This document shows positions 161-64,000 of a stretch of 64,000 nucleotides of DNA, piece by piece. The notes beneath the pieces were generated by a model. The model worked only from the letters and a program-made list of their open reading frames with translations, was not told the origin of the DNA and searched no databases. The translations under genes were made by a program, and so were the position numbers. Location: the NCBI RefSeq assembly GCF_963921235.1, contig NC_086108.1, positions 87,854,001 to 87,918,000 of the forward strand, in the 5' to 3' direction. The DNA comes from Mobula hypostoma (lineage: Eukaryota). The first letter of the stretch is position 1. Every line of letters begins with the position of its first letter.

Positions 161-459
161 ACCTGGCCACCCTCATGACTATTACTCTAATACATTAGGA
201 ACTTTGCCAAAGCTACAAATTTTCTGCTCAAAAAATCTCTGGAATGCATTTTATCAATTGCTCAGTAATAGAACTGATGACTTCATTGTTGTCATATCCC
301 CTCATACTATATGAGGTGTGTGAGTCTTATTAAATGTCAATTGTAATATACACCACAAGAGAAATGGATTGCAAAACCTGCTTTTATTCAGATCACACAG
401 GACTCAGCATGAATTCTATTTGCTGGTTTTGTAAATAGAGATTTTTTTTTAATGTAATC

Positions 460-3125
460 GGAGAGAGATGCAGCTCTTTCCAGTAAGACTCACCATGATG
501 GCTTGTGTGTTTAAATCAATACGGAATGGTGCAAGAACTCTGTGCTGGTTTCCAGATACTGCTCATCGCTAGTGGAGTTTGTGACTGTTAGATGCAGACC
601 ATTTTATTTGCCACGGGAATTTACCATTGTCCTTATAGTCGGTGTGTACATTCCCCCCAGCGCTAATGCTAAGGAGGTGCTCTGTGAACTGTATGGGGCT
701 ATTAGCAAACTGCAGAATGCACACCCTGATGGACTGTTTATTGTCGCCGGAGATTTTAACCACGTGAAACCTAAGTCAGTGCTTCCCAGATTCTATCAGT
801 ATCTGGACTTTGCAACAAGAGGGGAGAGCGCGTTGGATCTTGTTTACACAAACATTCCTGACGCGTACTGGGTGGAGCCCCGCCTCCACCTCGGTTACTC
901 AGACAACATCTCTGGGATTAGCATTATCCCGGCATACAGACCACTCGTCAGGCGCTCCAGACCAGTTCAGAAGCAGATGAAAACCTGGCCAGCAGGAGCC
1001 ATCTCTGCTCTTCAAGACTGCTTTGAGCACACTGACTGGCACATGTTCAGGGAGGCTGCAACCGATGGCGACTCTACCAACTTAGAGGAGTGCACGGCAT
1101 CAGTGACTAGCTACATTAGCAAGTGCATCGATGACATCACTGTGGCCAAGACCATCACTACACACACTAACCAGAAGCCATGGATGACCGTGGAGGTGCG
1201 TGCACTGCTGAGGACCCGTGATTCCGCCTTCAGAGCAGGCGACAAGGCAGCCCTAACAACAGCGAGGGCCAAACTGTCCCGGGCCATCAGAGAGGCAAAG
1301 CGTGTACACGCCCAGCGAATCCACAGCCACTTCCAGGACAGCAGCGACACACAGCGCATGTGGAAGGGCATTCAGGACATCACCAACTACAAGACAACAC
1401 CACCTGCCTGTGCTGGTGATGCCTCCCACCCAGATGCGCTGAACAACTTCTATACTTGTTTTGATCCGGAAAATGACGTGGTGGCAAGAAAGACCACCCC
1501 TCCTCCAAATGACCAGGTGCTATATCTTACCATGGCTGATGTGAGGAGAACCCTGTGCAGGGTCAACCCACAGAAGGCTGCTGGACCAGACAATATTCCT
1601 GGCAGAGTGCTTAGAGGATGTGCAGATCAGCTAGCTGAGATTCTCACTGACATCTTCAACATCTCCAAGCAGCGCCATTGTTCCTACGTGCTTCAAGGCC
1701 ACCACCATTGTCCCCATGCTGATGAAGTCTTCAGTGTCCTCCCTCAACGACTACTGTCCCGTTGCACTTAAGTCCATCATCATGAAGTGTTTCGAGAGGC
1801 TCGTCACGAGGCACATCAAGACCCTGCTGCCTCCCTTACTGGCCCCCCTGCAGTTCATGCACCGTCCCAACTGTTCAACAGACGACGCCATTGCCATCAC
1901 CCTCCACCTGGCCCTAACCCACCTGGACAAAAAAGACATGTACGTTCGAATGCTGTTCATAGACTTCAGTTCAGCATTCGACACAATCATTCCTCAGAAA
2001 CTGACTGGAAAGCTGAGCCCACTGGGCCTGAACACCTCCCTCTGCAAATGGATCCTAGACCTCCTGACGGGAGACCTGAGTCAGTCTGGATTGGCAACAA
2101 CATCTCCAACACCATCACACTGAGCACGGGGGCCCCCCCAGGCCTGTGTGCTCAGTCCATTGCTGTTCACTCTGCTGACCCACGACTGTATTGCAACACA
2201 GAGCTCGAACCACATCATCAAATCCACCGATGACACAACCATGGTGGGTCTCATCAACAAGAACGATGAGTCAGCATACAGAGAGGAGTGCAGCGGCTAA
2301 CAGACTGGTGTAGAGCCAACAACCTGTCTCTGAATGTGAACAAAAGAGATGGTTGTTGACTTCAGGAGGACATGGAGTGACCACTCTCCACTGAACATTG
2401 ACAACTCCTCCATAGAGATCGTTAAGAGCACATAATTTCTTGGTGTTCACCTGGAGGAGAATCTCACTTGGTCCCTCAACACCAGCTCCATAGCAAAAAA
2501 AAGGCCAGCAGCGTCTCTACTTTCTGCAAAGGCTGAGAGAAGTCCATCTCCCAGCCCCCATCCTCACCACATTCTACAGAGATTGTATTGAGAGCACCCT
2601 GAGCAGCTGTATCACTGCCTGTTTCGGAAATTGCACCATCTCGGATCGCAAGACCCTGCAGCGGATAGTGAGGTCAGCTGAGAAGATCATCGGGGTCTCT
2701 CTTCCCACCATTATAGACATTTACACCATACACTGCATCCGTAAAGCAAACAACATTATGAAGGACCCCACACACCCCTCATACAAACTCTTCTCCCTCC
2801 TGCCATCTGGCAAAAGGCACCTAAGTATTCGGGCTCTCACGACCAGACTATGTAAGTTTCTTCCCCCAAGCCATCAGTCTCCTCAATACCCAGAGCCTGG
2901 ACTGATACCAACCTACTGCCCTCTACTGTGCATAATGTCTTGTTTATTATTTATTGTAATGCCTGCACTATTCTGTGCACTTTATGCAGTCCTGGGTAGG
3001 TCTGTAGTCTAGTGTAGTTTTTTGTGTTGTTTTACATAGTTCAGTGTAGTTTTTGCATTGTTCATGTAGCACCATGGTCCTGAAAAATGTTGTCTCATTT
3101 TTACTGTGTACTGTCTTGACTTGAC
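460..3125 (+). mobile_element. Rex1/Babar-type LINE, 5'-truncated, frameshifted APE endonuclease + RT
   Basis: ORF 542-1771 has [30 protein letters not shown] and [13 protein letters not shown] 1716-2123 has [18 protein letters not shown] and [15 protein letters not shown]. The C-terminus (HPSYKLFSLLPSGKR) is followed by a 3' UTR ending in ttgacttgac. Confidence 0.9.
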
Positions 3126-4765: not shown

Positions 4766-5642
4766 TTCAAGTTCAAGTTTATTGACATCAGACTGTATGT
4801 ATGTGTGTACCTATATAAAAATAAAATCAAACGATGTTCCTCTGGACCACAGTTCACACACAGTACATAAAACAAAATATTACCATAAAGTTAATACAAT
4901 TAAAAATGCACGTGGTACGCAGTACAGGTAAACAGTAAACAGCATGCTGTCCCAAGTGACGAGGCCCCGATGGTGGCAGTGTATTCATTAGTCTCACAGC
5001 CTGAAGGAAGAAGCTGAAACCCAGTCTGGCAGTCCTAGTCCTGGTGGGCATACCTCCTGTACCTCCCTCCTGATGGTACTGGGTCTAAGAGATTGTGGAA
5101 TCAACAATGCTTTGGGCCCTTTGTCTGCAATGCTCCTGGTAAATGTCAAAAATAGGGAGGAGAGGTACCCTGGTGATCCTTTTGAGGATTTTACTATCCT
5201 CTGTAGGGTCTTGCTGCCCGATGCTTTGCAGCTTCCATACCACACAGCAATGCAGTCAGACAGGACACTCTCGATGGTGCCCCTGTAGAACACTGTTAGA
5301 ATGGGGGCGATGAGCCTTGCATGGCCTCAGTCCCCTCAGAACGTGTAGACACCACTGTGCCTTCTTGACTAGTGAGGTCGAGTTGTAGGTCCAGGTTAGA
5401 TCATCCATTGCATTCACACACTTTTCACTCTTTCCATAGCAAAACCATTGATGTGGAATAAAAAGCCTTATAATCGGTGAATTTGATGGTGTGGTTTGAG
5501 CTGAATCTGGCAGTGCAGTCGTGAATCAGTAGCAGGCTGAGCACTCAGCTCTGGGGGCACCAGTGCCCAGCATGCCCAGCATGGAGCTTGAGATGTTGTT
5601 GCCAACTCTGACCAACTGGGGTCTTTCCGTCAAGAAGTCCAA
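4766..5642 (-). mobile_element. Rex1/Babar LINE 3' fragment
   Basis: Minus ORFs FYRGTIESVLSDCIAVWYGSC and RTARLGFSFFLQAVRLMN; ttcaagttcaag tail at the left end. Confidence 0.8.
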
Positions 5643-6692
5643 CAGTAGAACAGTGATGCACAAAACATAGCCCATAGGCCGCATATCTGCTGCACAAGAC
5701 TGGTCTGTCTGCCCTGCTGACAGCGAAGCATCTTACTCCTCAGGGAACTGGCTGCCTATTCCTGCCACTGGTTCTTGGGAGTCTTCAAGATGCTCCCAAA
5801 GCTGCGGCCGGTGGTGTTTTCAGCCGAAATATATGGTAACCAATAGATACATCGGGGAAGCAACTTACTATCTCAACATTCCCCAGTCAATCTTCCCTCT
5901 GCTGCCCCACACTAGACCTGGCAACAAGAAGCCAGTGGAGTGATACTCTGGTACTACATCAGATCTAGTGCAATCGTCTGGACCCAGCATCCAGATTCAG
6001 GCATAGACCACCACTGAATGAAACTGTGGACTGATACTGGAGGCACAAGTCACTATAACACTTCAACACAAATGGGCACAGGCTTGGCAAAATGGAGAGG
6101 AGAACTGACCAGTGGAGCAGTGATGGAAGAAGAGGAATGGAAACAAGTAGATCAGTGTGTAGTCAGTGATTTGTGTAGCGAGCTTAACAGGGGCATCTTT
6201 AAATAACAGTTATATATTGTTAAAATAAGGCAAACTGAAGCCATCAGGGTTAGCCTGGATTGGAAATTCAGCCCTCCTACAGAAAATGTGTGTGCGACAC
6301 TGATTAAAAAGAATGGGAGCTGGAGCTCTAGCAGATAAATTTCTTTTAAAGTTCAAAGGAAGATTGATGGAGTAAACATTTTTTTCCAGCAAGAGGCAAG
6401 AATTAGAGTTATAGTCTCAACATAAGTAATTGAGATTATCCATTAATAACTGAGATTAATTTTTTTTAAAAAGCATAGTGCTGCAAGTCTTTGAAATTTT
6501 ATTAACTTGACTTCAAAGTGGCTTTACATTCAATTACTAAACACATACAAGGATGACATGGATATCATGCAGTAATACAGTACGGGAACAGGCTCTATGG
6601 CCTAGTTCAGCCATACCGACCGAACACAGTACCAGGTTCTTCAGGACTAAGGGAATATGTTTATCAGAAGTAGCATGGATACGTACAGTGGA

Positions 6693-7675
6693 TCAGAATC
6701 AGATTTAATATCACTGGCATATGTCATGAAATATGTTTTGCAGCGGCACATTGTCCAATTGTGCATTTAAATAAATAAATAGAGGTAGTGTACATGGGCT
6801 CCTCGTCCATTCAGAAACCTGATGGTGGAGGGGAAGCAGCTTTTCCTGAAACATCGAATGTGTGCCTTCAGGCTCCTGTACCACCTCCAATATGGTAGCA
6901 AAGATGGAACGTCCAAGGTAATGGGGTCCTTAATGACGGATACCGCCTTTTTGAGGCATTGCCTCTTCAAGATTGTCTCAATGCTGGGGAGGCTAGTTTC
7001 TCATGATAGAGCTGGCTGAGTTTACAATTTTCTGCAGCATTTTCCAATCCTGTGCCAAATGGCGATGCAACCAGTTAGAATGCTCTCCATGATATATCTG
7101 TAGAAATTTGCAAGAGTCTTTGGTGGCATACCAATTCTCCTCAAACTCCAAATGAAATAAGACACTGTCATGCCTTCCTTGTAACTGCATTAACATGTTG
7201 GGGCTAGGATAGATCTTCAGAAATATTGACACCCAGGAACTTGAACCTGCTCATGCTTTTCACTGCTGATCCCTTTGGTATGTGTTCCCTTGACATTCCC
7301 TTCCTGAAGTCTACAATCAATTCCATGGTCTTACTGATGTTGAATGCAAAGTTGTTACAACACCACTCAACTAGTTGGTGGATCTCACTCCTGTATGCCT
7401 CATCATCATGTGAAATTCTACTAACAATGGTCGTGTCATCAGCAAATTTATAGGTAACACTTGAGCTGTGCCTAGCCACACGAACGTGGATATAGAGAGA
7501 GTAGAGCAGTGGGCTAAGCACACATCCTTGAAGAGCACCAAGGTTGATGGTCAGCGAGGAGGAGATGTTATTTCTGATCCACACACACTGTGGTCTCACA
7601 GTAAGGAAGTCAAGGATCCAGTTACAGGGAGAGGTACAGAGGCCCAGGTTTTGGAGCTTGTAATCAGTTTTGAGG
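6693..7675 (-). mobile_element. Rex1/Babar LINE RT C-terminal half and 3' UTR (3' part of chimera)
   Basis: [45 protein letters not shown]; tail cagaatcaga at ~6693. Confidence 0.88.
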
Positions 7676-7975
7676 TTCATGTAATAACCTTAATGTATAC
7701 AGAGTAGATTCTGGTTCTTTACACTCACAAAAGCCAAATGTTTGCAAATTTCCTGAAGCTCCTTGAACTCTCTTCCAGCTTAAAACCAAGCCACATTTCG
7801 CAAGCGACTTCCTGATTAACATATCAGCAGCCTTCTCAGATACATTGCCTGTGAAAACTGTAGTTAGACCACTGCTTTCATCACTTTCACACTTCCTCTG
7901 AGCAGCATGATCCATTCCTTGGTCTGATATGCCTTCCAACCAGAGGCACAAAGGTTGGCATCAACACCAGTTTGC
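7670..7975 (-). pseudogene. RBM25: RBM25 fragment (pre-RRM and RRM), apparently intronless, frameshifted, copy 1
   Basis: VLMPTFVPLVGRHI..DH..TTVFTGNVSEKAADMLIRKSLAKCGLVLSWKRVQGASGNLQTFGFCECKEPESTL.LRLLHE matches the vertebrate RBM25 RRM as recalled (TTVFVGNISEKASDMLIRQLLAKCGLVLSWKRVQGASGKLQAFGFCEYKEPESTLRALRLLH). Confidence 0.92.
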
Positions 7976-8016
7976 CCTCTGTTGGGCAACAGTTCATGTT
8001 GTACAGCATGGAGACA

Positions 8017-8465
8017 GCTGTGGCATCATTCTGTACCCTTCTTAATTCACTTTCAGTTGACTCTGACAGGGAATGTGGAATGCAAATGGCGGATGGATCT
8101 CCAATCAAGTTGTAGTTGTCTCAGCCAATCACACCCCCACAATGCTGGCCCCTGTTTTTAACAACATAAAAACCCAAAGTGGCTTGTTGTATTTCACTGT
8201 TACAAATGTCATTCCCACACAAGTTATTTTTTATGTTCTTAGTTGGTTATCTGCTGGCTTCAGATAACTTTAGTATCTTTGAAATGCCATTCAAATTCAT
8301 TTTGTGGAATGACTGAAACAACCGAGTCAGTGTCCAATTCCATTTTAATTAATTTGTCATTCACTTCTGATGTAAGCCATATTGCTTGTCTATTGTTAAG
8401 TTTTCACATTGTAAATCTCAAGGCTACTCAGTCCCATGTCATTCTCATCACTATCAGTTGTTTTC
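8017..8465 (-). mobile_element. Ty3/Gypsy pol fragment: aspartic protease region, decayed
   Basis: Manual minus-strand translation across indels gives IWLTSEVNDKLIKMELDTDSVVSVI (DTG motif mutated to DTD, 8308-8343), VGMTFVTVKYN, GFYVV, LWGCDWLRQLQLDW (retropepsin GxDWL) and ESTESELRRV..ATAV. Confidence 0.8.
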
Positions 8466-8968
8466 CCAAAATCTCCCTACACCAGCTTTAAAAGACTCAA
8501 ACAACCTGTCTTGACAAAGAACAGTGAAGCCACCGGGCTGCAATGCTGCATCCAAAATGGCAGAAGTGAGCCATGTTTCCATGAAGCAAAGTACACAGCA
8601 GTCCCTGATGTCCCATCTGGTGCAGCAATGCTGCACTGAGTTCTTCAGTTTTATTTTCATTCACCAGCAGGACAGTTGTGTGTGGGTGGTCTACGGCCTA
8701 TGCATTTCAATCGTACCTATAGACCAGCGCGTTTTCCCCACCCGTTTTCTTTAAAAGGAACTGCACTCATGACCTGAGCCTGTCAACCAGAGTCCATTAA
8801 TTTTAAGGATTGATAGATTTTGTTTTAATTGTCTTAAATCAATGTTGCTTATTGAAGTACCCATGGTTGTGACTTGATTTCAGCTGTAGTAGTCCTAAAC
8901 AGGGATATTTTATGTTTCCCATCAGAGGTACATGCAAAGAGACACCAGTTATTGACGCCATTTTGGGC
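8466..8968 (-). mobile_element. Rex1/Babar LINE 5' end with N-terminal APE endonuclease (5' part of chimera)
   Basis: ORF 8454-8660 has DIRDCCVLCFMETWLT..DAALQPGGFTVLCQDR, a typical APE N-terminus; 5' aaaatggcgtc at ~8955-8965. Confidence 0.78.
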
Positions 8969-9129
8969 TGTCATCATTCACATTGCTAACGAATGCACAT
9001 TGCACAGGTTCAAGGAAGCAAATTAATGCAGGAGAAGGATATTTAGCCCTGAGACCATTTAATAAGATCATGGTTGATCGTGTGCTTCAAGTCCAAGGAT
9101 CAGATATCAGTAGTATCACCAAAAGTTAA

Positions 9130-9372
9130 ATATAATTGATTCTGGTAATTGGCACAAATTGGAAACAGTACATTTTGGCCCAATTAAGCGGCCGCCCCAA
9201 TTAGCCCAAGTTTCATGGAAATTGTTAAGATGGTATAAGAGATAAACTGCTTTGAATTGAGTAACAGATTGTGTATTTAAATGAATTACAGAAAAAATTA
9301 GCACACTACCAATGCTATTACAGTACTATAAAACTATGTATTAGTTCCTAATTTTTAGTGTTTGCTGCTGTG
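9130..9372 (+). mobile_element. MITE-like DNA transposon fragment (pogo/Tigger-like), related to 62333-62532
   Basis: cattttggcccaatt..gccccaattagcccaagtt matches, in reverse, 62465-62500; that copy ends in TA+CAGTGGAT. Confidence 0.5.
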
Positions 9373-9862: not shown

Positions 9863-10068
9863 TTAGCTGTTAGACACTGCACCATGCTATGCAAGTTCAC
9901 GGGACTGATGCCAGTTAGAAACTGCTCAGCAAGCCTCCTGCATCAATTGAGCGGCATAGTGTCCCAAATAAATGAAGGGAACCCGGGCTCTTTTCTTGAT
10001 TAGCTCTTGGTCTTCAAGAGTTGTCCCAAAGACTATCGAACATTGTTTAAACAGTCTCAATGACTCAC

Positions 10069-10156
10069 CTCCTTTTAAGAGCACTTCGTAAACCTGGGCA
10101 AACCGTGACCCCACCTCTGCCAACATTGTTGCCTTTCAAAGTGGTACTTCCAAAGC
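10069..10156 (-). other. Candidate 88-nt exon of an unidentified minus-strand host gene
   Basis: Acceptor tcccttttgtattgtatcccttag| and donor AG|GTGAGT in non-repeat sequence. Contains ACAATGT opening MLAEVGSRFAQVYEVLLKG; the phase-1 frame is also open. Confidence 0.55.
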
Positions 10157-10957
10157 CTAAGGGATACAATACAAAAGGGATTAAAAGTCAACATTTTATA
10201 TGGCCATTACAATAAACAAATCACAATAAAATTTAAGCCAAGCCACAAGCAGCATTTAAATCAATGTTAACACTCTTACTGTGAGTTTGATTTTTTTTTA
10301 AATGAGAAGGAATTTCATGAACTGAGTTTTGAAAAGGAGACAACTGATAATAAAAGACAAAGCAAAAAGTTGAAGAGAAATAAATTTCATCAATCTGCTT
10401 TTTTTCTTTAAACACAATTGGGGAACGGATAATTTAGTTCAGCAAGTAAAACAATGAAAAATCTGGGAAAAAAATTTGGTTGAATAAGAGGAACAATATT
10501 TAAAAGATCTGTTTATGAGGAAAGTGGCAGAGAGTGTTGGAATAGAGAGTACAAGATGTCATAAACCTAACAAAGCTTCAGCAATGACAGGCCCGAGGCT
10601 GGACAGAGGCATATTTTATTTATTTAGAAATACAGTTCAGAACAGGCCCTTCCTGCCCAACAAACCGCATCACCCAGGAGCCCACTTATTCAACCCTAGC
10701 CTCATCACAGGACAATTTACAATGACAGAAAGACCTATAGACAGGGAATTGGAAGCCAGTTGAGCTTCTGGTTAAGACTTGGGCAGTAGCCAGGAGATGA
10801 AAACAGAGGAATGAAGTCATTTGATTTTTCCCAAAGTTTAACAAGACAACATGGTACAATTATTCAGCAGGTCCAAGAGGATGCTGTGGAGAAAAAGACC
10901 AGGACAGTGGGCTCACTGAAAGGAAATCAGATTTGAATCTGAAATTAAAACAGAAAA

Positions 10958-11185
10958 ATCACAAACACGAGAAAATCTGCAGATACTGGAAATCCAAAGA
11001 AACACGCAAAATATTGGAGGAACTCAGCAGGTCAGGCAGCATCTATGGAGAAGAATAAACAGTCTACACTTCAGGCAGAGACCCTTCAGAGTCCTGATGA
11101 AGGATCTCTGCCCGAAACATCAACTGTTTACTCTTTTCCATAGATGTTGCTTGGCCTGCTGAGTTCCTCCAGCATTTAGAGCGTG
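10958..11185. mobile_element. Palindromic Penelope-derived short element
   Basis: Two inverted PLE-end arms centred ~11090, hammerhead-like core on the right arm, 13-bp TSD ttaaaacagaaaa (10945-10957, 11186-11198). Confidence 0.8.
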
Positions 11186-12229
11186 TTAAAACAGAAAATG
11201 CTAAAAAAATACTCAGGAGGGAACATAGCTTCCGTTACAATAGAAACAGAGCTAACATTTCACGACAAAGATCCATGATGAGAATGGTTCTCATGAAGTA
11301 TGTATATCTGAAATGAATTGCTCATTTCTTTTTCCATAGATACTGTCTGGCCTGCTGAATGCTTCTGCTATTTCCCTTTTTATTGTTCCTAAGCATAAGG
11401 ACACCAAAAATACAAAACAAAGTGGGTGACAAGGCAGATCAGAACTTCCAAAAGGTACCAAAGTGAAAGAAGATTAAAGATGGCTGGAAATTTGAGGGTG
11501 CCATTGTTAAGGGATTGCTCCACAATCCCAGAGCTGGGCAATGTAACTAAAAAGTAGAATAGGATACAAAGAAGACCTTTACAAATGGATTTAGGGATAA
11601 GAAAGGTTATAGTAGTATAGAGCTCCTCAGTACTTGGTGCTCAGTACAACCCAGTTGTATTAAATACAAAATTAAATCAATTCTTGTAAACAAAATTATC
11701 TAAGATTTTATGTTAAGTTAATGCCAACATCCAACACATTTATTTTAGGTCAATTATCAGCTTCCATCATGAAATTTACTTCAAACGTTTGACAAAAGAA
11801 TCAATTTGCAAAGCCAAGAGTGAACATTGAGGATAAGAGTGAAATGAGAGGGAAAAGGAAAGTGCTGATGGAGGAAATGGAGATTCAGGGATAAACAAAG
11901 TTAGCAGAAAGAGAAGAAAGGATCTGAACACAAAATCACTCACTCTCACATTTCTCTGGTTTGATTGGATTGCCTTCCCCTTCAGAAGAATGAAAAATAC
12001 TTTGGAAACAAACAAATTAACACAGGAGGCCATTTATTGCCTTTAAAAGTAGAATAAAAGTTTAATATGATCCACAGCCACTTTAAAAGTCAGTCAACTC
12101 CTTAAGCTAAAGCCTTATTTTCCAGAAGTTAAAATGAAAGGTGGCAGTTTGTGAAGCAGTCTGAGGAATTCCAACCCCACAAGTAATAAATAACTACTAA
12201 CTTGTTTTGATACTGTACAAGGTTGCGTC

Positions 12230-12760
12230 CACAGGTTCAAGCACCAAGAGGAACCCAATTTCGATAGTTATCTCCTGAGTGGGGCAGTGGTTTGCATAGA
12301 AATCTGGAAAATAAATAGGACCAATTGAATAAAAGTACATTTCGGATCATCATCCATCCTTCATGCAATCAACACCGACAAGACTGGCATCAGCTGATTC
12401 TCTCTCACACACAATTGTCCTGGAGAAAATGGTAGTGCTCAGTCTTCTTGATCTGTTGCATTCCTCCTGATAATGATACTCCCACAATGCTCCTGGGGAG
12501 GAAGTCCTTAGCCTCAAACCCAATAATGGTATTTCCCTACTCACGATGCTGTGCAGCTTGTCAGGAAACATGTCACTGCAGGTTCCCACACATCTGCAGT
12601 CTTTTGGTGGTAGAGGCTTTGGCTTTGCTACTATCATTGCATATTGTCCAACTGCAAAGATACACAAGTGATTTCTCGTACACATGTTCCCATCCATCTC
12701 ACTTTTCTATTCAACTCAGACCAAGTGCCCAGCCCAATTATTATTACTGATGTCTTTGGT
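12230..12760 (-). mobile_element. Decayed CR1/L2-type LINE 3' fragment
   Basis: Weak resemblance to CR1-like C-terminal/3' UTR sequence; no intact frame. Confidence 0.4.
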
Positions 12761-13546
12761 CTGTGACGGGAATCTACGAAGTCTCTTGCACCTGAAAAAC
12801 CCTCATGCCTAAGAGCAACTCTCCTGATTACTGGGTGATCAAATAATATTGCATGGCATACTACCCTATTCACTATTCCGGAATCTCAATTTTTCTGGCC
12901 ACATGGATTCATTAAAATCAACAGAATACAGGATTAATCCCCAGGCAGGCAGTAGAGCTACAGGGAAGACTTATGCCCAGGTTTAAAATAAAGGTGACTA
13001 AGATTGATATTAGAAATAACTTCATACACCCAAGTCCTCAATATAGACTGTTAGCAGTGTGCATTTTTTAACATATGTAATACAGATACACACAGAAGAA
13101 TTTATGGCCCATCTGTAATTATCCTTGAACTGGAGCAATTAATTCACTTTGCATTGGATATAAATCACCTTGCAGACCTCCAAATCCAGCCCTGGCCTCG
13201 TGCATGCCCTCTACCCTAGTGCATGTGAAAATAGATGCAACTGCAGAAGAATTATGGAGTTGGGAAGAACAGTTCGAAAAATAAATTACATTCATTAGGA
13301 TGAATTAAGTGCGGCCTGTGAACGTCGTCGACTTCACATGCAAATTGCAACCATTGTTTCATTAACAATAGCTCCACAACCAGTCTACATACAAATCTAC
13401 GTGTTTAGTAGTCAAAAATCAAATCATTAAACTAAAATCTTGTAATAGAGCAGTGAAATATAAGCAATCTTAATTGTAAACCATGATGGAGTTCTATGAA
13501 CTGTTCATGTGTACGGGTTTGGAGGGAGGAAAGCTTTGCTCTTTTT

Positions 13547-14322
13547 CTAGGAAGAGGTACAGTTGACGTTTAAGGGCGAAATCCTTCGTCAGGACTAACT
13601 GAAGGAAGACTTAGTAAGAGATTTGAAAGTGGGAGGGGGAGGGGGAGATCCAAAATGATAGGAGAAGACAGGAGGGGGAGGGATGGAGCCAAGAGCTGGA
13701 CAGGTGATAGGCAAAAGGGATATGAGAGGATCATGGGACAGGAGGTCTGGGGAGAAAGACAAGGGGGGGCGGGGGGAGACCAGAGGTTGGGCAAGGGGTA
13801 TAGTCAGAGGGAGAAAAAGGAGACAGAGAAAGAATGTGTGTATATAAATAAATAATGGATGGGGTACGAGGGGGAGGTGGGGCATTAGCGGAAGTTAGAA
13901 AAGTCGATGTTCGTGTATTTATTTATATACACACATTCTTTCTCTCTCTCTCTCTCTCTCTCTCTCCTTTTTCTCCCTCTGTCCCTCTGACCATACCCCT
14001 TGCCCATCCTCTGGTTCCTCCCCCCCCCCTGTCTTTCTCCCCAGACCTCCTGTCCCATGATCCTCTCATATCCCCTTTGCCAATCACCTGTCCAGCTCTT
14101 GGCTCCATCCCTCCCCCTCCTGTCTTCTCCTATCATTTTGGATCTCCCCCCCCCCACTTTCAAATCTCTTACTAACTCTTCCTTCAGTTAGTCCTGACGA
14201 AGGGTCTCAGCCTGAAACGTCGACTGTACCTCTTCCTAGAGATGCTGCCTGGCCTGCTGCGTTCACCAGCAACTTCGATGTGTGTTGCTTGAATTTCCAG
14301 CATCTGCAGAATTCCTGTTGTT
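13547..14322. mobile_element. Penelope-like element: two divergently inverted pLTR-type copies
   Basis: 13547-13910 (minus; includes NIDFSNFR* of the GIY-YIG C-terminus) and ~13915-14322 (plus) are near reverse complements; same family as 61805-62330. Confidence 0.88.
14190..14225 (+). ncRNA. Minimal type I hammerhead ribozyme (PLE type)
   Basis: AGUC-CUGACGA-AGG(GUCUCAG)CCU-GAAAC-GUC^GACU: complete core, stem I AGUC/GACU, loopless palindromic stem III (ACGU). Confidence 0.75.
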
Positions 14323-17135: not shown

Positions 17136-18839
17136 TCTGTCACTGTTACTTGCTTAGATAAACAGCAATCCGAGTTCCGGATGCTAATCCAGCAAAGATG
17201 CTGTGGAGGGAGTAGCAAGGTGGCAGCCTAGTGAGATACAACTGAATAGTGGACATGACAGACATATTTGTCATTCTTGCCAAAGAGAGGCCTCAGCCAT
17301 TAATACCTCAAATACTTTTCTATTGAGAGAGGAAAAGGACACGAGTGACTCTGTAATGGGGGAATTAAACTGTTGGGTTGCCAGTGAAAATAGATGGAGC
17401 TGTTTACACATCATGGTATATATGAGCCTTCATTGCATTGATTGCATAGAATGAGAGACTGTGCTTGAGAAAAATGTCATAGCACTAGGCAATGAAGAGA
17501 TTGTGTCAACATCTATGCTTTGGGGTATACAAGATCTGTCCCAACGAGCTACTTACTGGTCAGGTGGACTTAAGGGATCTTAAGAGATATCCAGTAGTCC
17601 ATAGCTCACAGTGTCTATCAGATGAAGTTACACTCCAGAAGAGTAGTCAAGGAAAAGTTCACAACTAATCCAAGACAAAAATATGACTTGGGATGAGAAT
17701 ATAGTTTAAAAAGAGAGAAAAAACAGGCACGGGAGTTGAAACACATTGAATATCTCAACCAAGAATGCATCTTTCAGGAATATAAAGCATGTTTTTTTTT
17801 GAAAGCCTTCAGTTTGCACTGTTCATGACCTGGTAGCAAGAGCTACTTATGTTGGCCTCAAAGAAGGACCTTCAACATTGTAAGTCATTACTGCATAGAA
17901 AGGCATTAAACAAGTCAGGAAAAGTGGGTTGTCCTTCACACTTCATTTGAGTTGTCCAATATTAGGACATCATTTGCACGGTGATCAATAGGAATATTCC
18001 TTTTCATATTACCAAACAACTTGAAGAGACACAATTCAGATACACAAGTCAACCAGTTCAGTGAAGCATCATTGAAAGATGCTCAATTAGTATACTTTCT
18101 TATACTGTCCATGTTGAAAGTTAGAAGGCAGATCCTGTCATCCCATCCGTCCCCAAATTGTCTCTAACACTCGGTTCTGTTGTATCTGTCGATATCCTCT
18201 GCTGCATCCTGGATACAAGCACAGGCATCCCTGCTCAAGGCCTCCAATGCAATCCAAATTTGATTCAGCCATTTCAGTAACTCCATAAACAAAAGCACTT
18301 TCTCAAGACTCATGCAATCACAGTCTCACAAAAGCACGTGCAATTTGCCTGAAATGATCTTATGTTTCTCCAAACATGTACTTATTGATGTTCAGTCAAT
18401 GCAATGTATCTACAATGCAAATGGTGAACTGAGAATCACTCAAATTCTGACTATGCTGGATGCCTTGAGCAATTATGCAGCGAAGACAATTTAAAAGAGT
18501 TCCAAAGTTCCAATTAGTGCTATTACACAAAGCTTGGACTTGTTAATGTCAGCTCAACACAATACATTCAGTGGGCACCAAGCAATTACAACCAACTGAG
18601 CATTGAAGACAATCCAGGGTCAGATTGTCAGAAGTAATCAACTTTGTAACTTCCAATAGGGCCAGCACAAGAAAGAATAAGTTCAGTATTTACAATCAAG
18701 CTTCAAAACTGTTCCTTTATCTCCTCTCTGCACCTGGATCCTCAACTTCTTTAATAAGGAGACCACAGGTCAGTGCAAATCAGGAACATCTCCTCCTGCC
18801 TAACAATAAACATAGGCATACCTCAAAGATATGTGCTTA

Positions 18840-19650
18840 GCTCACAGGTCTACTCTCCCTGTACTCACAACTGTGTCTCTAGGTACAGCTCAAATGCAAT
18901 CTGTAAATGAGCTGATAACACCACTTGTTGGGGTACAGGAATAAGATAGATCAACTGGTTGGGTGATGTCACAACAACAATGACCCACTCAACATCAGCA
19001 AGATAATGGAATTGATTGCGGACATAAGGAAGAGAAAGTTGGGAGAACACATCAATCCTTTATGGATGGTCAGGGTTAGAAAGGGTGAGCAGCTTCAAAA
19101 TCCGAGAAGCTATCTTGGGACCAGCACATTGATGCAATCACAAAGGCGGTATGCCAGCGGCTCTGCTTCATTAATTTCAGAAGATTTAGTATGTTCAAGA
19201 CTCTTGTCAATTTCTGCAGATCTATCTTGGACAGCATTCTGAATGGTTGCATCACCCTCCAGTAAGGAGGCTCTTATCAGGAGACCAGAAGAGGCTGCAG
19301 AGGGTTGTAAACTCAGCCAATTCATCATGTGAACAACCCTCACCACCACTGAGGACATCTTCAATAGGTGCCTCAAGAATGCAGCATCCATCATTAAGGA
19401 CCATTACCATCTGGTACAGGCCTTCTTCTCATTACTACCATCGGGGAGGAAGGACAGCAGTCTGAAGACCCACACTCAATAATTCAGTTTCTTTCTGTCA
19501 TCAGCTTTCTGAATAGCCCATGAACAGTATCTGGTTCTTCCTCCTTTGCTCTAGTTTTGGAACTTAGAGTAATTTTTTATGCCTCAACTATATTGCTCCC
19601 ACAAAACAACTAATTTCATATCATACCGAGATAATAAAACTGATTCTGAA
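18840..19650 (+). mobile_element. Rex1/Babar LINE 3' fragment, decayed
   Basis: DQKRLQRVVNSA, gcagcatccatcattaaggacc, ctaccatcggggagg; 3' aataaaactgattctga. Confidence 0.75.
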
Positions 19651-25085: not shown

Positions 25086-25619
25086 TCTGAAGAGACAGGG
25101 TCCTTTTCAGTTATTTCGAAATGAACCTGCTTCTTCTGTTTTGTCATTAGTCTCTCCAAATGCAAACACAAACACAGAGGACCCAAGGTCAGGGTGGATG
25201 GACATCAGATTCCAAACATGGGCAAAAAAAAAGCGTTTCTTTTGGGCCACGGAAAAGCAAAAATAAACATATAGAGCTAAGGATTCTATTTTGTATATTT
25301 TTTACCACCGAATCACAAACAAAATTTCCAGGGAGAGTTTGTTGAAAACTCAAAGTACCAGCCAATAACAATGAAGACCAGTCAAGAGGGCCCTTCTCAC
25401 TCAAGTAATAAAAGTTATTCAACCTATAATTCTCAATTATCCTATGAAGAAATGAATCAGAGTATAAAACAGTGGAAAAGTACAGAAATCAGGCATTTTA
25501 AACGTTTACTTTAAATATGAAGCAGGAATGTAGCGGGTTGGTGTAAGAGAAGACAGAGGGGTTTACTTTATCCAGTCTGCTGACTAATAAAATTCAAACA
25601 ATGTGAAGGGAGCAAATAA

Positions 25620-25714
25620 CATACATAAAAGTTGCTGGTTAACGCAGCAGGCCAGGCAGCATCTCTAGGAAGAGGTGCAGTCGACGTTTCAGGCCGAGAC
25701 CCTTCGTCAGGACA
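25620..25714 (-). mobile_element. Penelope 3' end containing an intact minimal hammerhead (25679-25714)
   Basis: Minus strand reads GUC-CUGACGA-AGGGUCUCGGCCU-GAAAC-GUC^GAC. Confidence 0.8.
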
Positions 25715-25751
25715 AATACAAGTCCAGATTGCAACTAATTGCTACCTTCAC

Positions 25752-26415: not shown

Positions 26416-26499
26416 ACCACACTTGCCAAAACTCTTAAATTCTACTAGTATCAGAAGAAAAAAAAGTACTAGAATTTAACTTCAAAAATGAACCCCTCA

Positions 26500-26628
26500 T
26501 TCTAATCTCTTACTAGCTCTTCTCTCAGTTAGTCCTGACAAAGGGTCTCGGCCCGAAACGTTGACTGTACCTCTTCCTAGAGATGCTGCCTGGCCTGCTG
26601 CGTTCACCAGCAACTTTGATGTGTGTTC
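26500..26628 (+). mobile_element. Penelope 3' end fragment with mutated hammerhead core
   Basis: agtcctgacaaagggtctcggcccgaaacgttgact (CUGACAA instead of CUGAnGA). Confidence 0.8.
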
Positions 26629-27084
26629 CCTCAGTTAAGAAACGACCGGTAAATACGTACATTTCCCATGCATCACACAGAATTAAATTGTCAACTCATC
26701 ATTTGCATGGTTCTTGCACAGTAAATTAAAAACCAAACAGGAATTTTAAATTAAAAAGTAAAGCATTTGATTATCGGTTTTATTTTTTTTAGAACATTTT
26801 TAAGCACCTTTAATGTGGGAAGATCAAAAGGCCGAAACAGTTCATCACTCATCAGGGAAGTGGATGGAATGAAAATATTCAACTCCATAATAAATAAAAA
26901 TTAAGGCCAGTTGATTCAAAGTTACATTTTACTGGTGCTTTCTGTACTGCAGAATGAAAAGGAAATAAAATTAGTCAGTTTCATACATGTAGGCCTGGTC
27001 TATGCTCAACATTCGATATAGAATTAACTAGCTAGTACAAAAGGGATAAATGATTCCCTTTTGGTTCAGAATGCCGCAGAACAG

Positions 27085-61770: not shown

Positions 61771-61804
61771 AAAATTATTAGAAACTAATACAGTTTTATT
61801 GTAG

Positions 61805-62332
61805 CAACACACATAAAAGTTGCTGGTGAACGCAGCAGGCCAGGCAGCATCTCTAGGAAGAGGTACAGTTGACGTTTCGGGCCAAGACCCTTCGTCAGGA
61901 TTAACTGAAAGAAGAGCTTGTAAGAGATTTGAAAGTGGGAGGGGGAGTGATGGAGCCAAGAGCTGGACTGTTGATTGGCAAAGGGGATATGAGAGGATCA
62001 TGGGACAGGAGGCCCAGGGAGAAAGAAAGGGGGGGAACCCAGAGGATGGGCAAGGGGTATAGTGAGAGGGACAGAGGGAGAAAAAGGAGAGAGAGAAAAA
62101 GAATGTGTGTATATAAATAAATAACAGATGGGGTACGAGGGGAAGGTGGGGCATTAGCAGAAGTTTGAGAAGTCAATGTTCATGCCATCAGGTTGGAGGC
62201 TACCCAGACGGAATATAAGGTGTTGTTCCTCCAACCTGAGTGTGTCTTCATCTTTACAGTAGGGGAGGCCATGGATAGACATATCAGAATGGGAATGGGA
62301 TGTGGAATTAAAATGTGTGGCCACTGGGAGAT
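61805..62332 (-). mobile_element. Penelope-like element 3' part (GIY-YIG C-terminus + pLTR with hammerhead-like core)
   Basis: PVATHFNSTSHSHSDMSIHGL..LRLEEQHLIFRLGSLQPDGMNIDFSNF*; cctgacgaagggtcttggcccgaaacgtc. Confidence 0.9.
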
Positions 62333-62532
62333 ACAGTAGTTTTATTGTACTGTATTGGTAGTGTTCTAATTTGTTCTGCATTTCATTTAAATGCATAATT
62401 TGTTACTCAGTTAAACAGTAGTTTATATATATAACTTTTATACCTTTATAACAACTGCCACGAACCTTTGGCCAATTGGGGCAGTGAATTGGGCCAAAAT
62501 GTTCTGGATCTGGTATGTACCAATCCACTGTA
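62333..62532 (-). mobile_element. MITE-like DNA transposon end (pogo/Tigger-like)
   Basis: Reverse similarity to 9165-9330; ends atccactg+ta. Confidence 0.55.
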
Positions 62533-62853: not shown

Positions 62854-63520
62854 TGTTGTGTTTTGCAACATCAAACCATTAAACTAGTTCAAAAGAAGAC
62901 ACAGGAGTCCAGGTTTGACTGAGTTTACAGTTGATGTTTCAGGCCAAGGTTCCTCATCAAAACTGGAAAAAAAAGTTGAGAAGTTAGAGCAAGAAGGTGG
63001 GGGGGAGGGGTGGAGGAAGTACAAGGTGGTAGGTGATAGGTGTAACTGGGATGGGGAGGGGCAAAGAAAAGGAAGCTGATTGGTGAAAGAGATGAAGGAC
63101 TGGAAAGGGGGGAACCTGATAGGAGGGAGTACAAGACCATGGAAGGAAAGGAAGGGGGAGGAGCACCAAAGGACAACACTCCTCCCTGCTTAGCTACAAG
63201 CTCCAACTCAATGTAGAATGCATCTCACCTATTTACAGAGCATATTATCAACAAAACTACTATATACAGACATTCACATTAGTAAATTTTAAATTTTCCG
63301 TTTCAGGCCTAAAAACTTAATTGCTGTGTAGGATTTCTTACTTTTTTGGAATAATGCCTTTCATTACATGGGTGATGATCTCTCTGTTTGGCAGATGAGA
63401 CTTGTTGCTGTGAAAACAACCACAAGTTCTAGGGCCTCCTCCATGGTGTTTGTAGGAGATGGCTCTGAGGCTGCAGGGATTTGTTCTGACAGCTCTGGAC
63501 ACCTTTCCTCTTCTTTTAGT
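62854..63520 (-). mobile_element. Gypsy 3' end: pol-like C-terminal tail, PPT and disrupted 3' LTR
   Basis: Minus: P/E/S/T-rich tail EERCPELSEQIPAASEPSPT..SQQQVSSAKQ..NERHYSKKVRNPTQQL* (cf. Gypsy RRYP.R.R.PP.RL); PPT aagcagggaggag (63179-63191) directly followed by TGTTGT; LTR end 62854-62925 matches solo LTR 43951. Confidence 0.75.
62926..63172 (-). mobile_element. Penelope-like pLTR fragment inserted in and replacing most of the LTR
   Basis: cagttgatgtttcaggccaaggttcctcatcaaaactgg plus purine-rich tract, as in other PLE copies. Confidence 0.72.
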
Positions 63521-64000
63521 TTGTGCATCTTGACCTTGGAAAGATGCATTTAGCTCACTGGAGTATTCTATTATTAATCGTTCTATTGCTCCGTTTATGA
63601 TCTGAACTCTCCTCTTGGTTTCCTCGTCCACAACATGTGACTATTCGAATTTTCTGTTTGTATCTCTTGTCTCTTTTCTTTTCAGCCTTCCATTCATCTA
63701 GCTGGGATTTAGTCTTTATGTCTAGTTTGACAAGCAGCTTTTTGTCTCCCACTTAAAGTTCCTGCAATAACCTTAATGCACACAGTAGATTTTGTTTCTT
63801 TATACTCACAAAAGACGAGTGCTTGCAACTTTCCTTAAACTCCTTTATCTCTCATCCAGTTTTAAACAAAACCACACTAGGCCTGATTAACATATCAGAG
63901 GCATTCTCAGATCTATTACTTGCACCAACTGTTGCAGCTGAACCATTGCTTTCATCACTTTCACACTTTCTCTGAACAACAAGGTCTTCCCTTGCTTTCC
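63521..64000 (-). pseudogene. RBM25: RBM25 fragment (RRM and following helix), apparently intronless, with stops and frameshifts, copy 2; runs off window
   Basis: QRKCESDES..ASDMLIR..CGFV*NW..GKLQALVFCEYKE..ALRLLQEL*VGDKKLLVKLDIKTKSQLDEWKAEKK..DEETKRRVQIINGAIERLIIEYSSELNA, matching RBM25 as recalled (IGEKKLLVKVDAKTKAQLDEWK..DEETKRRDQMIKGAIEVLIREYSSELNA). Confidence 0.92.

What the first reader, a model, noticed from the sequence alone, without database searches (positions are those of the whole stretch)
6693..8968. Four-part chimera: Rex1 LINE 5' end + Gypsy protease + RBM25 + Rex1 LINE 3' end
Seen: all four parts are co-oriented (minus). The LINE keeps its 5' end/N-terminal endonuclease (8466-8968) and its RT C-half/3' tail (6693-7675), but the middle of its ORF is replaced by the PR-RBM25 piece. 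There are no LTRs or TSD at the internal junctions. At the RBM25-RT junction the bases cctcaa (7670-7675) fit both RBM25 (LHELQ) and RT (PSKL), which looks like microhomology. Inference: double template switching during LINE reverse transcription, or microhomology-mediated repair, moved an LTR-captured host gene into a LINE chassis. Since both LINE termini remain, it could have been re-amplified as a non-autonomous LINE, a second round of gene capture across TE classes.
Basis: partly seen in the sequence, partly recalled or inferred. Interest (0 to 1): 0.75.

Follow-up and report, generated by a model that had tools for sequence, protein, structure and literature searches.

The report
One-off LINE / Gypsy-RBM25 mosaic copy
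A dead jumping-gene copy (Rex1-like LINE) in a ray genome has its middle replaced by a 0.8 kb piece of another jumping gene that carries a stolen host-gene fragment (RBM25); it is real and old, but it is a single locus that was never copied again, so it is a curiosity.

Summary
The four co-oriented minus-strand parts are there. They are a LINE 5' region with the endonuclease N-terminus (about 8968-8457), a decayed Ty3/Gypsy protease (8457-8056), an intronless RBM25 N-terminus plus RRM (8020-7670), and a LINE RT C-half with tail (7675-6693).

- **Source of the insert:** the protease-RBM25 piece comes from an abundant Gypsy-RBM25 family, roughly 1,000 copies by contig depth. Earlier notes of this scan report that family elsewhere in this genome.
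- **RBM25/RT junction:** RBM25 is cut short here. The bases CCTCAA fit both sides at 5-6 of 6 positions.
- **3' end:** the LINE ends at 6693, exactly where more than 1,800 paralogous contigs end. It abuts single-copy DNA.
- **Re-amplification is not supported:** the endonuclease/protease junction (point depth read at 8480) is covered only at single-copy depth in three related species.
- **Same subfamily:** the two LINE halves match the same full-length LINE proteins. This shows the same clade only, not the same subfamily.
- **Target-site duplication:** none is detectable.

The mechanism stays open. The candidates are two template jumps by the LINE reverse transcriptase, break repair that captured Gypsy cDNA, a nested insertion followed by deletions, and two separate LINE copies. 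Double template jumps by LINE enzymes are already published. This is a one-off example of a known kind of event, and its interest is low to moderate.

The parts
8876..8968 (-). LINE 5' region upstream of the endonuclease (5'UTR or ORF2 N-terminal extension). It is multi-copy, about 300 copies by depth.
   Evidence: depth 3019 from 103 contigs at 8904. Joints 8614->8876 and 8658->8876 in 3-6 contigs of organism A (X1), and in 1-6 contigs of B (X5) and C (X9), tie this segment to the endonuclease part in other copies. The true 5' terminus is not established.
8659..8875 (-). Low-copy stretch of the LINE 5' region that many other copies lack or have in a different form.
   Evidence: depth 196 from 19 contigs at 8694. 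Joints skip 8659-8875 or 8615-8875.
8457..8690 (-). LINE apurinic-type endonuclease N-terminus (VNENKTEEL..DIRDCCVLCFMETWL..QDR..GVGRFWENN), with one frameshift.
   Evidence: 45-49% identity to the endonuclease N-termini of P0082 (aa 10-56) and P0038 (aa 130-168). The homology ends at the ENN codons, 8465-8457.
8447..8466 (-). Junction J1, LINE endonuclease to Gypsy gag-end/protease. It is unique to this locus.
   Evidence: point depth at 8480 is 6.7 (A), 10 (B) and 6.3 (C), which is single-copy. Paralogous Gypsy contigs stop aligning at 8450-8457. Endonuclease paralogs reappear at 8501. The exact breakpoint and any overlap are unresolved.
8056..8457 (-). Decayed Ty3/Gypsy gag-end and aspartic protease, with several stops and frameshifts.
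   Evidence: motifs; RVP clusters at 0.94; depth 40,000-65,000, so thousands of paralogs.
7670..8020 (-). Intronless RBM25 fragment: N-terminal region plus most of the RRM, truncated after LLHEPQ.
   Evidence: 72-75% to RBM25-like proteins; 76% DNA identity to the second copy at 63758-63981, where RBM25 continues with VGDKKLLVKLD...; depth 10,000-13,000.
7670..7675 (-). Junction J2 overlap CCTCAA, shared by RBM25 (L/P-Q) and the LINE RT (P-Q).
   Evidence: Five or six of six bases are shared. I estimate about 0.5-2% by chance.
7207..7675 (-). LINE reverse transcriptase C-terminal half, starting at ..P(Q/S)KLITKLQNLGL.
   Evidence: RVT_1 9.6e-12, profile positions 88-205; 16,152 relatives; relatives have [13 protein letters not shown] just upstream, which is missing here.
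6693..7206 (-). LINE ORF2 C-terminus, 3'UTR and short tandem-repeat tail (TCTGAT-type). The 3' terminus is at 6693.
   Evidence: C-terminal matches; 1,806 contigs in organism A diverge exactly at 6692/6693, and depth is above 100,000.
5661..6692 (.). Single-copy flank next to the LINE 3' end. It does not contain the rest of the Gypsy-RBM25 element.
   Evidence: depth about 10 in A and about 8 in B. The organism B contig 5500-6721 spans the same edge; no match to the second Gypsy-RBM25 copy.

Best explanation
This is one dead, fixed, single-copy mosaic. A Rex1-like LINE copy keeps its 5' region with the endonuclease N-terminus and its RT C-half with the 3' tail. About 1.5 kb of ORF2 core (roughly aa 65-573) is replaced by 788 bp taken from the inside of a Gypsy element that already carried a spliced RBM25 fragment. 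I think the most likely origin is a single retrotransposition event. The LINE reverse transcriptase copied the LINE RNA from its 3' end. At CCTCAA it jumped to a Gypsy-RBM25 RNA and copied about 0.8 kb. It then jumped back to the LINE RNA near the start of ORF2. The product was never copied again. Shown here: the parts, their order and strand, the junction overlap, the family origin of the insert, and the uniqueness and age of the locus. Inferred: that one enzyme made it in one pass.
For: - All parts are co-oriented, as template switching requires.
- The 3' terminus at 6693 coincides with the family terminus and abuts single-copy DNA. The LINE part was therefore laid down by its own integration mechanism, not into a pre-existing Gypsy element that continues downstream.
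- J2 has a 5-6 of 6 base overlap, and the LINE-type base sits at the one mismatched position. That is expected if the nascent cDNA annealed to the acceptor RNA.
- The donor RNA family is abundant, about 1,000 copies.
- Both LINE halves match the same full-length LINE proteins at similar identity.
- Both internal junctions join element interior to element interior, with no LTR edge.
- Double template jumps by LINE reverse transcriptases are documented (PMC2104539; 10.1101/2025.02.02.635956).
Against: - No target-site duplication brackets 6693-8968.
- The true LINE 5' end is not established.
- Subfamily identity of the two LINE halves could not be tested.
- Published chimeras have the foreign RNA at the 5' end. 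I found none that return to the LINE template.
- J1 could not be resolved to the base.
- J2 was not seen in independent reads.
- Every sequence feature found here is also compatible with repair-based or multi-step origins.
Confidence: 0.38

Rival explanations
1. Nested insertion plus deletions. A complete Gypsy-RBM25 element integrated into a full-length LINE in the same orientation. Two later kilobase-scale deletions each removed one LTR with the neighbouring Gypsy and LINE sequence, and these created J1 and J2.
For: - The window is packed with decayed transposable-element fragments, about 11 LINE pieces in 64 kb.
- The locus is old. It carries many stops and frameshifts and is shared by three species about 2% and 6% apart, so there was time for several events.
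- Microhomology at a deletion joint is common.
- No target-site duplication is needed.
Against: - It needs four events, with two independent large deletions that each end inside the Gypsy element and inside the LINE.
- No LTR or integrase-type edge survives.
- Shared orientation is only a 50% expectation.
Confidence: 0.25
2. Break repair with capture. A full-length LINE copy suffered a double-strand break with loss of about 1.5 kb. The gap was bridged by a Gypsy-RBM25 cDNA fragment, or by copying from an ectopic element, using microhomology-mediated end joining.
For: - Interior-to-interior junctions.
- The 5-6 base overlap at J2.
- An abundant Gypsy family as the source.
- Capture of LTR-retrotransposon cDNA at breaks is known from yeast (my own knowledge, not checked here).
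Against: - Shared orientation is only a 50% expectation.
- Captures of 0.8 kb in vertebrate germlines are rare.
- Nothing in the sequence separates this from template switching.
Confidence: 0.2
3. Two unrelated LINE copies. An older LINE 5' fragment already joined to a Gypsy-RBM25 fragment lay here. A second, ordinary 5'-truncated LINE then inserted, and its 5' end attached inside RBM25 by microhomology, deleting the target DNA in between.
For: - 5'-truncated LINE copies are very common here, above 10,000 by depth.
- LINE pieces occur about every 6 kb in this window, so a co-oriented neighbour within 1 kb has a chance of several percent.
- Microhomology at LINE 5' junctions is standard (for example PMC2666801, title and abstract only).
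Against: - LINE 5' ends are rare, a few hundred copies against more than 10,000 3' ends.
- Both halves match the same LINE proteins.
- J1 still needs a separate rearrangement.
- It requires a target deletion that removed exactly the rest of the Gypsy element.
Confidence: 0.15
4. Amplified non-autonomous LINE family. The chimera was transcribed and copied in trans, so other loci share both junctions.
For: It retains a LINE 3' tail, which such LINEs need for recognition, and a 5' region.
Against: -: at 8480, next to J1, only single-copy depth is seen in four runs of four species at 80% likeness or more. All neighbouring parts reach hundreds to tens of thousands of copies.
- No look-alike stretch was found in the scan index, though such a blank counts for little.
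Confidence: 0.02

Closest known systems
Bipartite and tripartite chimeric retrogenes made by LINE reverse-transcriptase template switching (mammalian U6/L1 and similar; Magnaporthe MGL-LINE / Mg-SINE / WEIRD; PMC2104539; 10.1101/2025.02.02.635956)
   Same: Co-oriented copies of different transcripts are fused directly. A LINE 3' end is the 3'-most part. Two junctions imply two jumps.
   Different: Here the enzyme would have returned to the LINE template, giving a LINE-X-LINE sandwich. The middle part is an LTR-retroelement RNA that carries a host gene. No target-site duplication was found, whereas the fungal tripartite case has a 14 bp one.
The Gypsy LTR family of this ray genome that carries spliced RBM25 in place of pol (earlier scan notes, e.g. 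s1-141904, s1-141810)
   Same: The focal protease-RBM25 segment shares that family's protease/RBM25 joint and is 76% identical to the copy at 63758-63981.
   Different: Only an internal 788 bp fragment is present. It has no LTRs and no gag body, and its RBM25 is cut about 300 bp earlier than in the family.
Ordinary nested or rearranged transposable-element debris, and LINE insertion-associated deletions
   Same: Interior-to-interior junctions with short microhomology, heavy decay, and a single locus.
   Different: The two flanking pieces are the two opposite ends of the same LINE clade, in the same orientation, each next to unique DNA. That points to one LINE copy and not to random neighbours.

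Membership tests
LINE-RT template-switch chimeric retrocopy | Parts are co-oriented copies of distinct RNAs fused directly, with no element termini at the joints | tested here: met
   All four parts are on the minus strand, and both joints are interior to interior.
LINE-RT template-switch chimeric retrocopy | The 3'-most part ends at the canonical LINE 3' terminus next to target DNA | tested here: met
   1,806 paralogous contigs diverge at 6692/6693, and the flank 5661-6626 is single-copy.
LINE-RT template-switch chimeric retrocopy | One target-site duplication brackets the whole chimera | tested here: not met
   The best flank-to-flank match scores below the shuffled mean. The 5' boundary is uncertain and this LINE type may not make regular duplications, so this is weak evidence against.
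LINE-RT template-switch chimeric retrocopy | Short complementarity at the switch points | tested here: inconclusive
   J2 shares CCTCAA at 5-6 of 6 bases. J1 could not be resolved for lack of Gypsy family sequence upstream of the protease.
Rex1/Babar-clade non-LTR retrotransposon | Apurinic-type endonuclease plus RT in one ORF2 | tested here: met
   The endonuclease N-terminus and the RT C-half each match P0038, P0082 and P0035, which carry both domains.
Rex1/Babar-clade non-LTR retrotransposon | Rex1-type RT motifs (the site of the Rex1 primer RTX1-F1, which encodes FSSAFNT) | tested here: inconclusive
   Relatives have FSSAFNTIIP directly upstream of the focal RT start. The primer is used as Rex1-specific in PMC4635592. 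The focal copy lacks that site because J2 lies three codons downstream. No phylogeny was made.
Rex1/Babar-clade non-LTR retrotransposon | 3' end made of short tandem repeats | tested here: met
   (TCTGATTCTGAT at 6693-6704). (loose-end consensus ..AATCAGA with variable repeats).
Gypsy-RBM25 LTR family of this genome | Shares the family's protease/RBM25 joint and RBM25 sequence | tested here: met
   paralogous contigs span 7742-8138, 7756-8131 and 7915-8219; 76% identity to the second copy in the window.
Gypsy-RBM25 LTR family of this genome | LTRs and integrase-made termini | tested here: not met
   There are no repeats flanking 7670-8457. The piece is an internal fragment, not an integrated element.
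Amplified non-autonomous LINE (chimera as a family) | Several loci share the chimeric junctions | tested here: not met
   Depth at 8480 is single-copy in organisms A, B and C and zero in F.

The most novel reading that the evidence does not exclude
A LINE reverse transcriptase of a cartilaginous fish jumped from its own RNA to an LTR-retroelement RNA that already carried a host gene, and then jumped back. This would have written a LINE-LTR-host gene-LINE sandwich in one pass. It would be a direct record of RNA-level recombination between the two retroelement classes, and of a host exon being handed from one to the other.
Probability: 0.35. Interest if true: 0.45.

Novelty: new member of a known kind. 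Interest (0 to 1): 0.27.

Why it matters
If the one-pass origin is right, the locus shows that LINE enzymes can use LTR-element RNA as a jump target and return to their own template. It would also show that a captured host-gene fragment can pass between retroelement classes. As found, it is a single inert locus with no sign of later spread, so its effect on the genome is nil. The abundant Gypsy-RBM25 family that supplied the insert is the more notable object, and other findings of this scan already cover it.

Tried and rejected
- **Pfam on short pieces:** nothing for the endonuclease and protease pieces, which are too short and broken.
- **Word-index search with the endonuclease piece:** no candidates.
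- **Word-index search with the RT piece:** the best relative is only 67% identical (sawfish), so no same-subfamily full-length LINE was obtained.
- **The look-up of encoding contigs:** A finer test of the two LINE halves was therefore not possible.
- **RBM25 search:** it returned only genuine RBM25 fragments and no Gypsy-RBM25 fusion proteins. One Logan-derived protein looks like the human RBM25 sequence. I did not fetch, compare or search its contig further.
- **Target-site duplication search:** negative. The apparent 8-base match at 9097 is the tail of another element, not a duplication.
- **Scan-index look-ups by sequence at both junctions:**
- **Apparent 5' truncation of the LINE at 18697 at the same site as J2:** rejected. 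That copy continues upstream (FS.IYNQASKL) with a small deletion.
- **Assembly error:** disfavoured for J1 and the outer edges, because contigs of three species cover them. J2 was not checked independently.

Full report
**What is there.** Reading the minus strand from 9100 down to 6600 gives four co-oriented parts.

1. A LINE 5' region. The endonuclease N-terminus (VNENKTEEL / DIRDCCVLCFMETWL...QDR...GVGRFWENN) runs from about 8690 to 8457 with one frameshift. It is preceded by about 300 bp of upstream LINE sequence, up to about 8968.
2. A decayed Ty3/Gypsy gag-end and aspartic protease, 8457-8056. The motifs are MELDTDSVVSVIP and GCDWLRQLQLDW. The atlas search places the first piece with retroviral aspartyl protease clusters at 0.94. 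Pfam found nothing in these short, broken pieces.
3. An intronless RBM25 fragment, 8020-7670. It covers the N-terminal region and most of the RRM, and is 72-75% identical to RBM25-like proteins of other vertebrates.
4. The LINE RT C-half (Pfam RVT_1 9.6e-12, profile positions 88-205), the ORF2 C-terminus and a short tandem-repeat tail that ends at 6693.

**Where the middle piece comes from.** Earlier notes of this scan list 25 findings that mention RBM25. The eight shown describe a Gypsy LTR family in this ray genome that carries spliced RBM25 in place of pol. One copy lies in this window at 62854-64000. The focal RBM25 stretch 7675-7907 is 76% identical to 63758-63981. In that copy RBM25 reads on past LLQEL into VGDKKLLVKLDIKTKSQLDEWKAEKK and further. 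The focal fragment is thus a truncated piece of the family's insert.

Contigs from four related species were laid on the region at 80% likeness or more. Paralogs span the protease/RBM25 joint (for example 7742-8138, 7756-8131, 7915-8219). Summed depth there is 10,000-13,000, against about 10 for unique flank, which suggests roughly a thousand copies. The piece came from that family and not from a fresh capture of RBM25.

**The junctions.**

- **J2 (RBM25/RT).** RBM25 homology runs to 7670 (...GAA CCT CAA; the second copy has CTT TAA). LINE homology starts at 7675 (CCT CAA AA- CTG ATT AC- AAG CTC, that is P-Q-K-L-I-T-K-L). Another LINE in the window has CCT CAG AAA CTG at the same place. Relatives have [13 protein letters not shown](S/Q)KLI.KL. 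The six bases CCTCAA fit both partners at 5-6 of 6 positions, which I estimate at about 0.5-2% by chance. The one doubtful base is of the LINE type.
- **J1 (endonuclease/Gypsy).** It lies within 8447-8466. LINE protein homology ends at the ENN codons (8465-8457), and paralogous Gypsy contigs stop aligning at 8450-8457. Without Gypsy family sequence upstream of the protease I could not measure any overlap.
- Neither junction is an LTR edge.

**The outer edges.** More than 1,800 paralogous contigs per run in organisms A, B and C diverge exactly at 6692/6693, so this is the canonical LINE 3' terminus. The DNA beyond it (5661-6626) is single-copy and shows no Gypsy-RBM25 continuation. This rules out a simple picture in which a 5'-truncated LINE dropped into a resident Gypsy-RBM25 element.

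On the 5' side, multi-copy sequence ends near 8960-8968. Joints in other contigs tie 8876-8960 to the endonuclease part, so that stretch belongs to the LINE. Whether 8968 is the true 5' terminus is unknown. No target-site duplication is detectable.

**Is it a family?** No. At 8480, beside J1, total depth is 6.7, 10 and 6.3 in organisms A, B and C. That is one contig each, the locus itself and its orthologs. The parts on either side reach 5,000 to 65,000. Organism B contigs also span both outer edges with few differences. The chimera is therefore real for J1 and the edges. It predates the split of three species that differ by about 2% and 6%, as estimated from shared 31-mers. It was not re-amplified. 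J2 itself was not visible in the contig pieces listed, so it rests on the assembly alone.

**One LINE or two?** The RT piece has 16,152 relatives. Three long ones, P0038, P0082 and P0035, match both the focal endonuclease piece (49, 45 and 36% identity) and the RT piece (54, 51 and 53%). On P0082 numbering the missing core is about aa 65-573, roughly 1.5 kb. This shows the same clade, not the same subfamily.

- The word search with the endonuclease piece was blank.
- The best RT relative is a 67% sawfish protein.

The clade is plausibly Rex1. The Rex1 primer RTX1-F1 encodes FSSAFNT, the motif that relatives carry three codons upstream of J2, and the tail is a short tandem repeat. I made no tree.

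Depth falls from above 100,000 at the 3' end to a few thousand at the endonuclease and a few hundred further 5'. That is the usual 5'-truncation gradient. LINE 5' ends are rare, which makes a chance neighbour less likely. Even so, LINE pieces occur about every 6 kb here, so chance is not negligible.

**Mechanism.** Four routes fit the data.

- **Two template jumps during target-primed reverse transcription.** This needs one event. It predicts the shared orientation and the LINE-type base inside the overlap, and it has published precedent (PMC2104539; 10.1101/2025.02.02.635956). It lacks a target-site duplication here.
- **Break repair that captured Gypsy cDNA or copied an ectopic element.** This needs two events, and orientation would be a coin toss.
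- **Nested Gypsy insertion followed by two large deletions.** This needs four events, but the locus is old enough for them.
- **Two unrelated LINE copies plus rearrangements.**

I put these at about 0.38, 0.20, 0.25 and 0.15. The sequence alone cannot separate them. An outgroup locus and subfamily consensus sequences would.

**Verdict.** This is a verified but ordinary-scale curiosity. It is a single, inert, ancient mosaic that fits a known kind of event.

One RBM25 search hit looked like the human sequence. I did not fetch or search its contig.

Noticed in passing
window 62854-64000 (minus strand): A second Gypsy-RBM25 copy, cut by the window end. Its RBM25 continues through VGDKKLLVKLD...DEWKAEKK and DEETKRRVQIINGAIERLIIEYSSELNAS (63752-63341). 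The family insert therefore spans at least about 650 bp of spliced RBM25 coding sequence.
   Followed up: partly
window 7754-8397: Contig depth suggests roughly 1,000 copies of the RBM25-bearing segment and several thousand of the protease segment in organisms A, B and C, each of which has a single-copy flank depth to compare against. Organism F (a low-coverage run) also shows deep coverage there. The captured-gene Gypsy family is thus abundant and older than these species.
   Followed up: partly
window 440-2814 (plus strand): A long Rex1-like LINE copy of another subfamily, 67-76% identical to P0038, covering the endonuclease from about aa 37 through the RT and C-terminus.
   Followed up: no
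window 18690-19650 (plus strand): A LINE copy 66% identical to the focal 3' part. It has a small deletion (about 24 bp) at the IIPSKLIT site, the very site where the focal copy has J2. The LINE has a near-repeat there (TCAAAACTG / TCCAAAACCTG) that may favour slippage or switching.
   Followed up: partly
window 13546-14295, 25613-25716, 26493-26638, 61795-62184: A repeat family with near-perfect inverted arms (13636-13774 against 14017-14155, 96% complementary). It was not identified.
   Followed up: no
window 9100-9363 (minus strand): Another high-copy element (depth 16,000-38,000) ends near 9097 with a TCTGAT-type tail like the LINE's. A relative lies inverted at 62331-62524.
   Followed up: no
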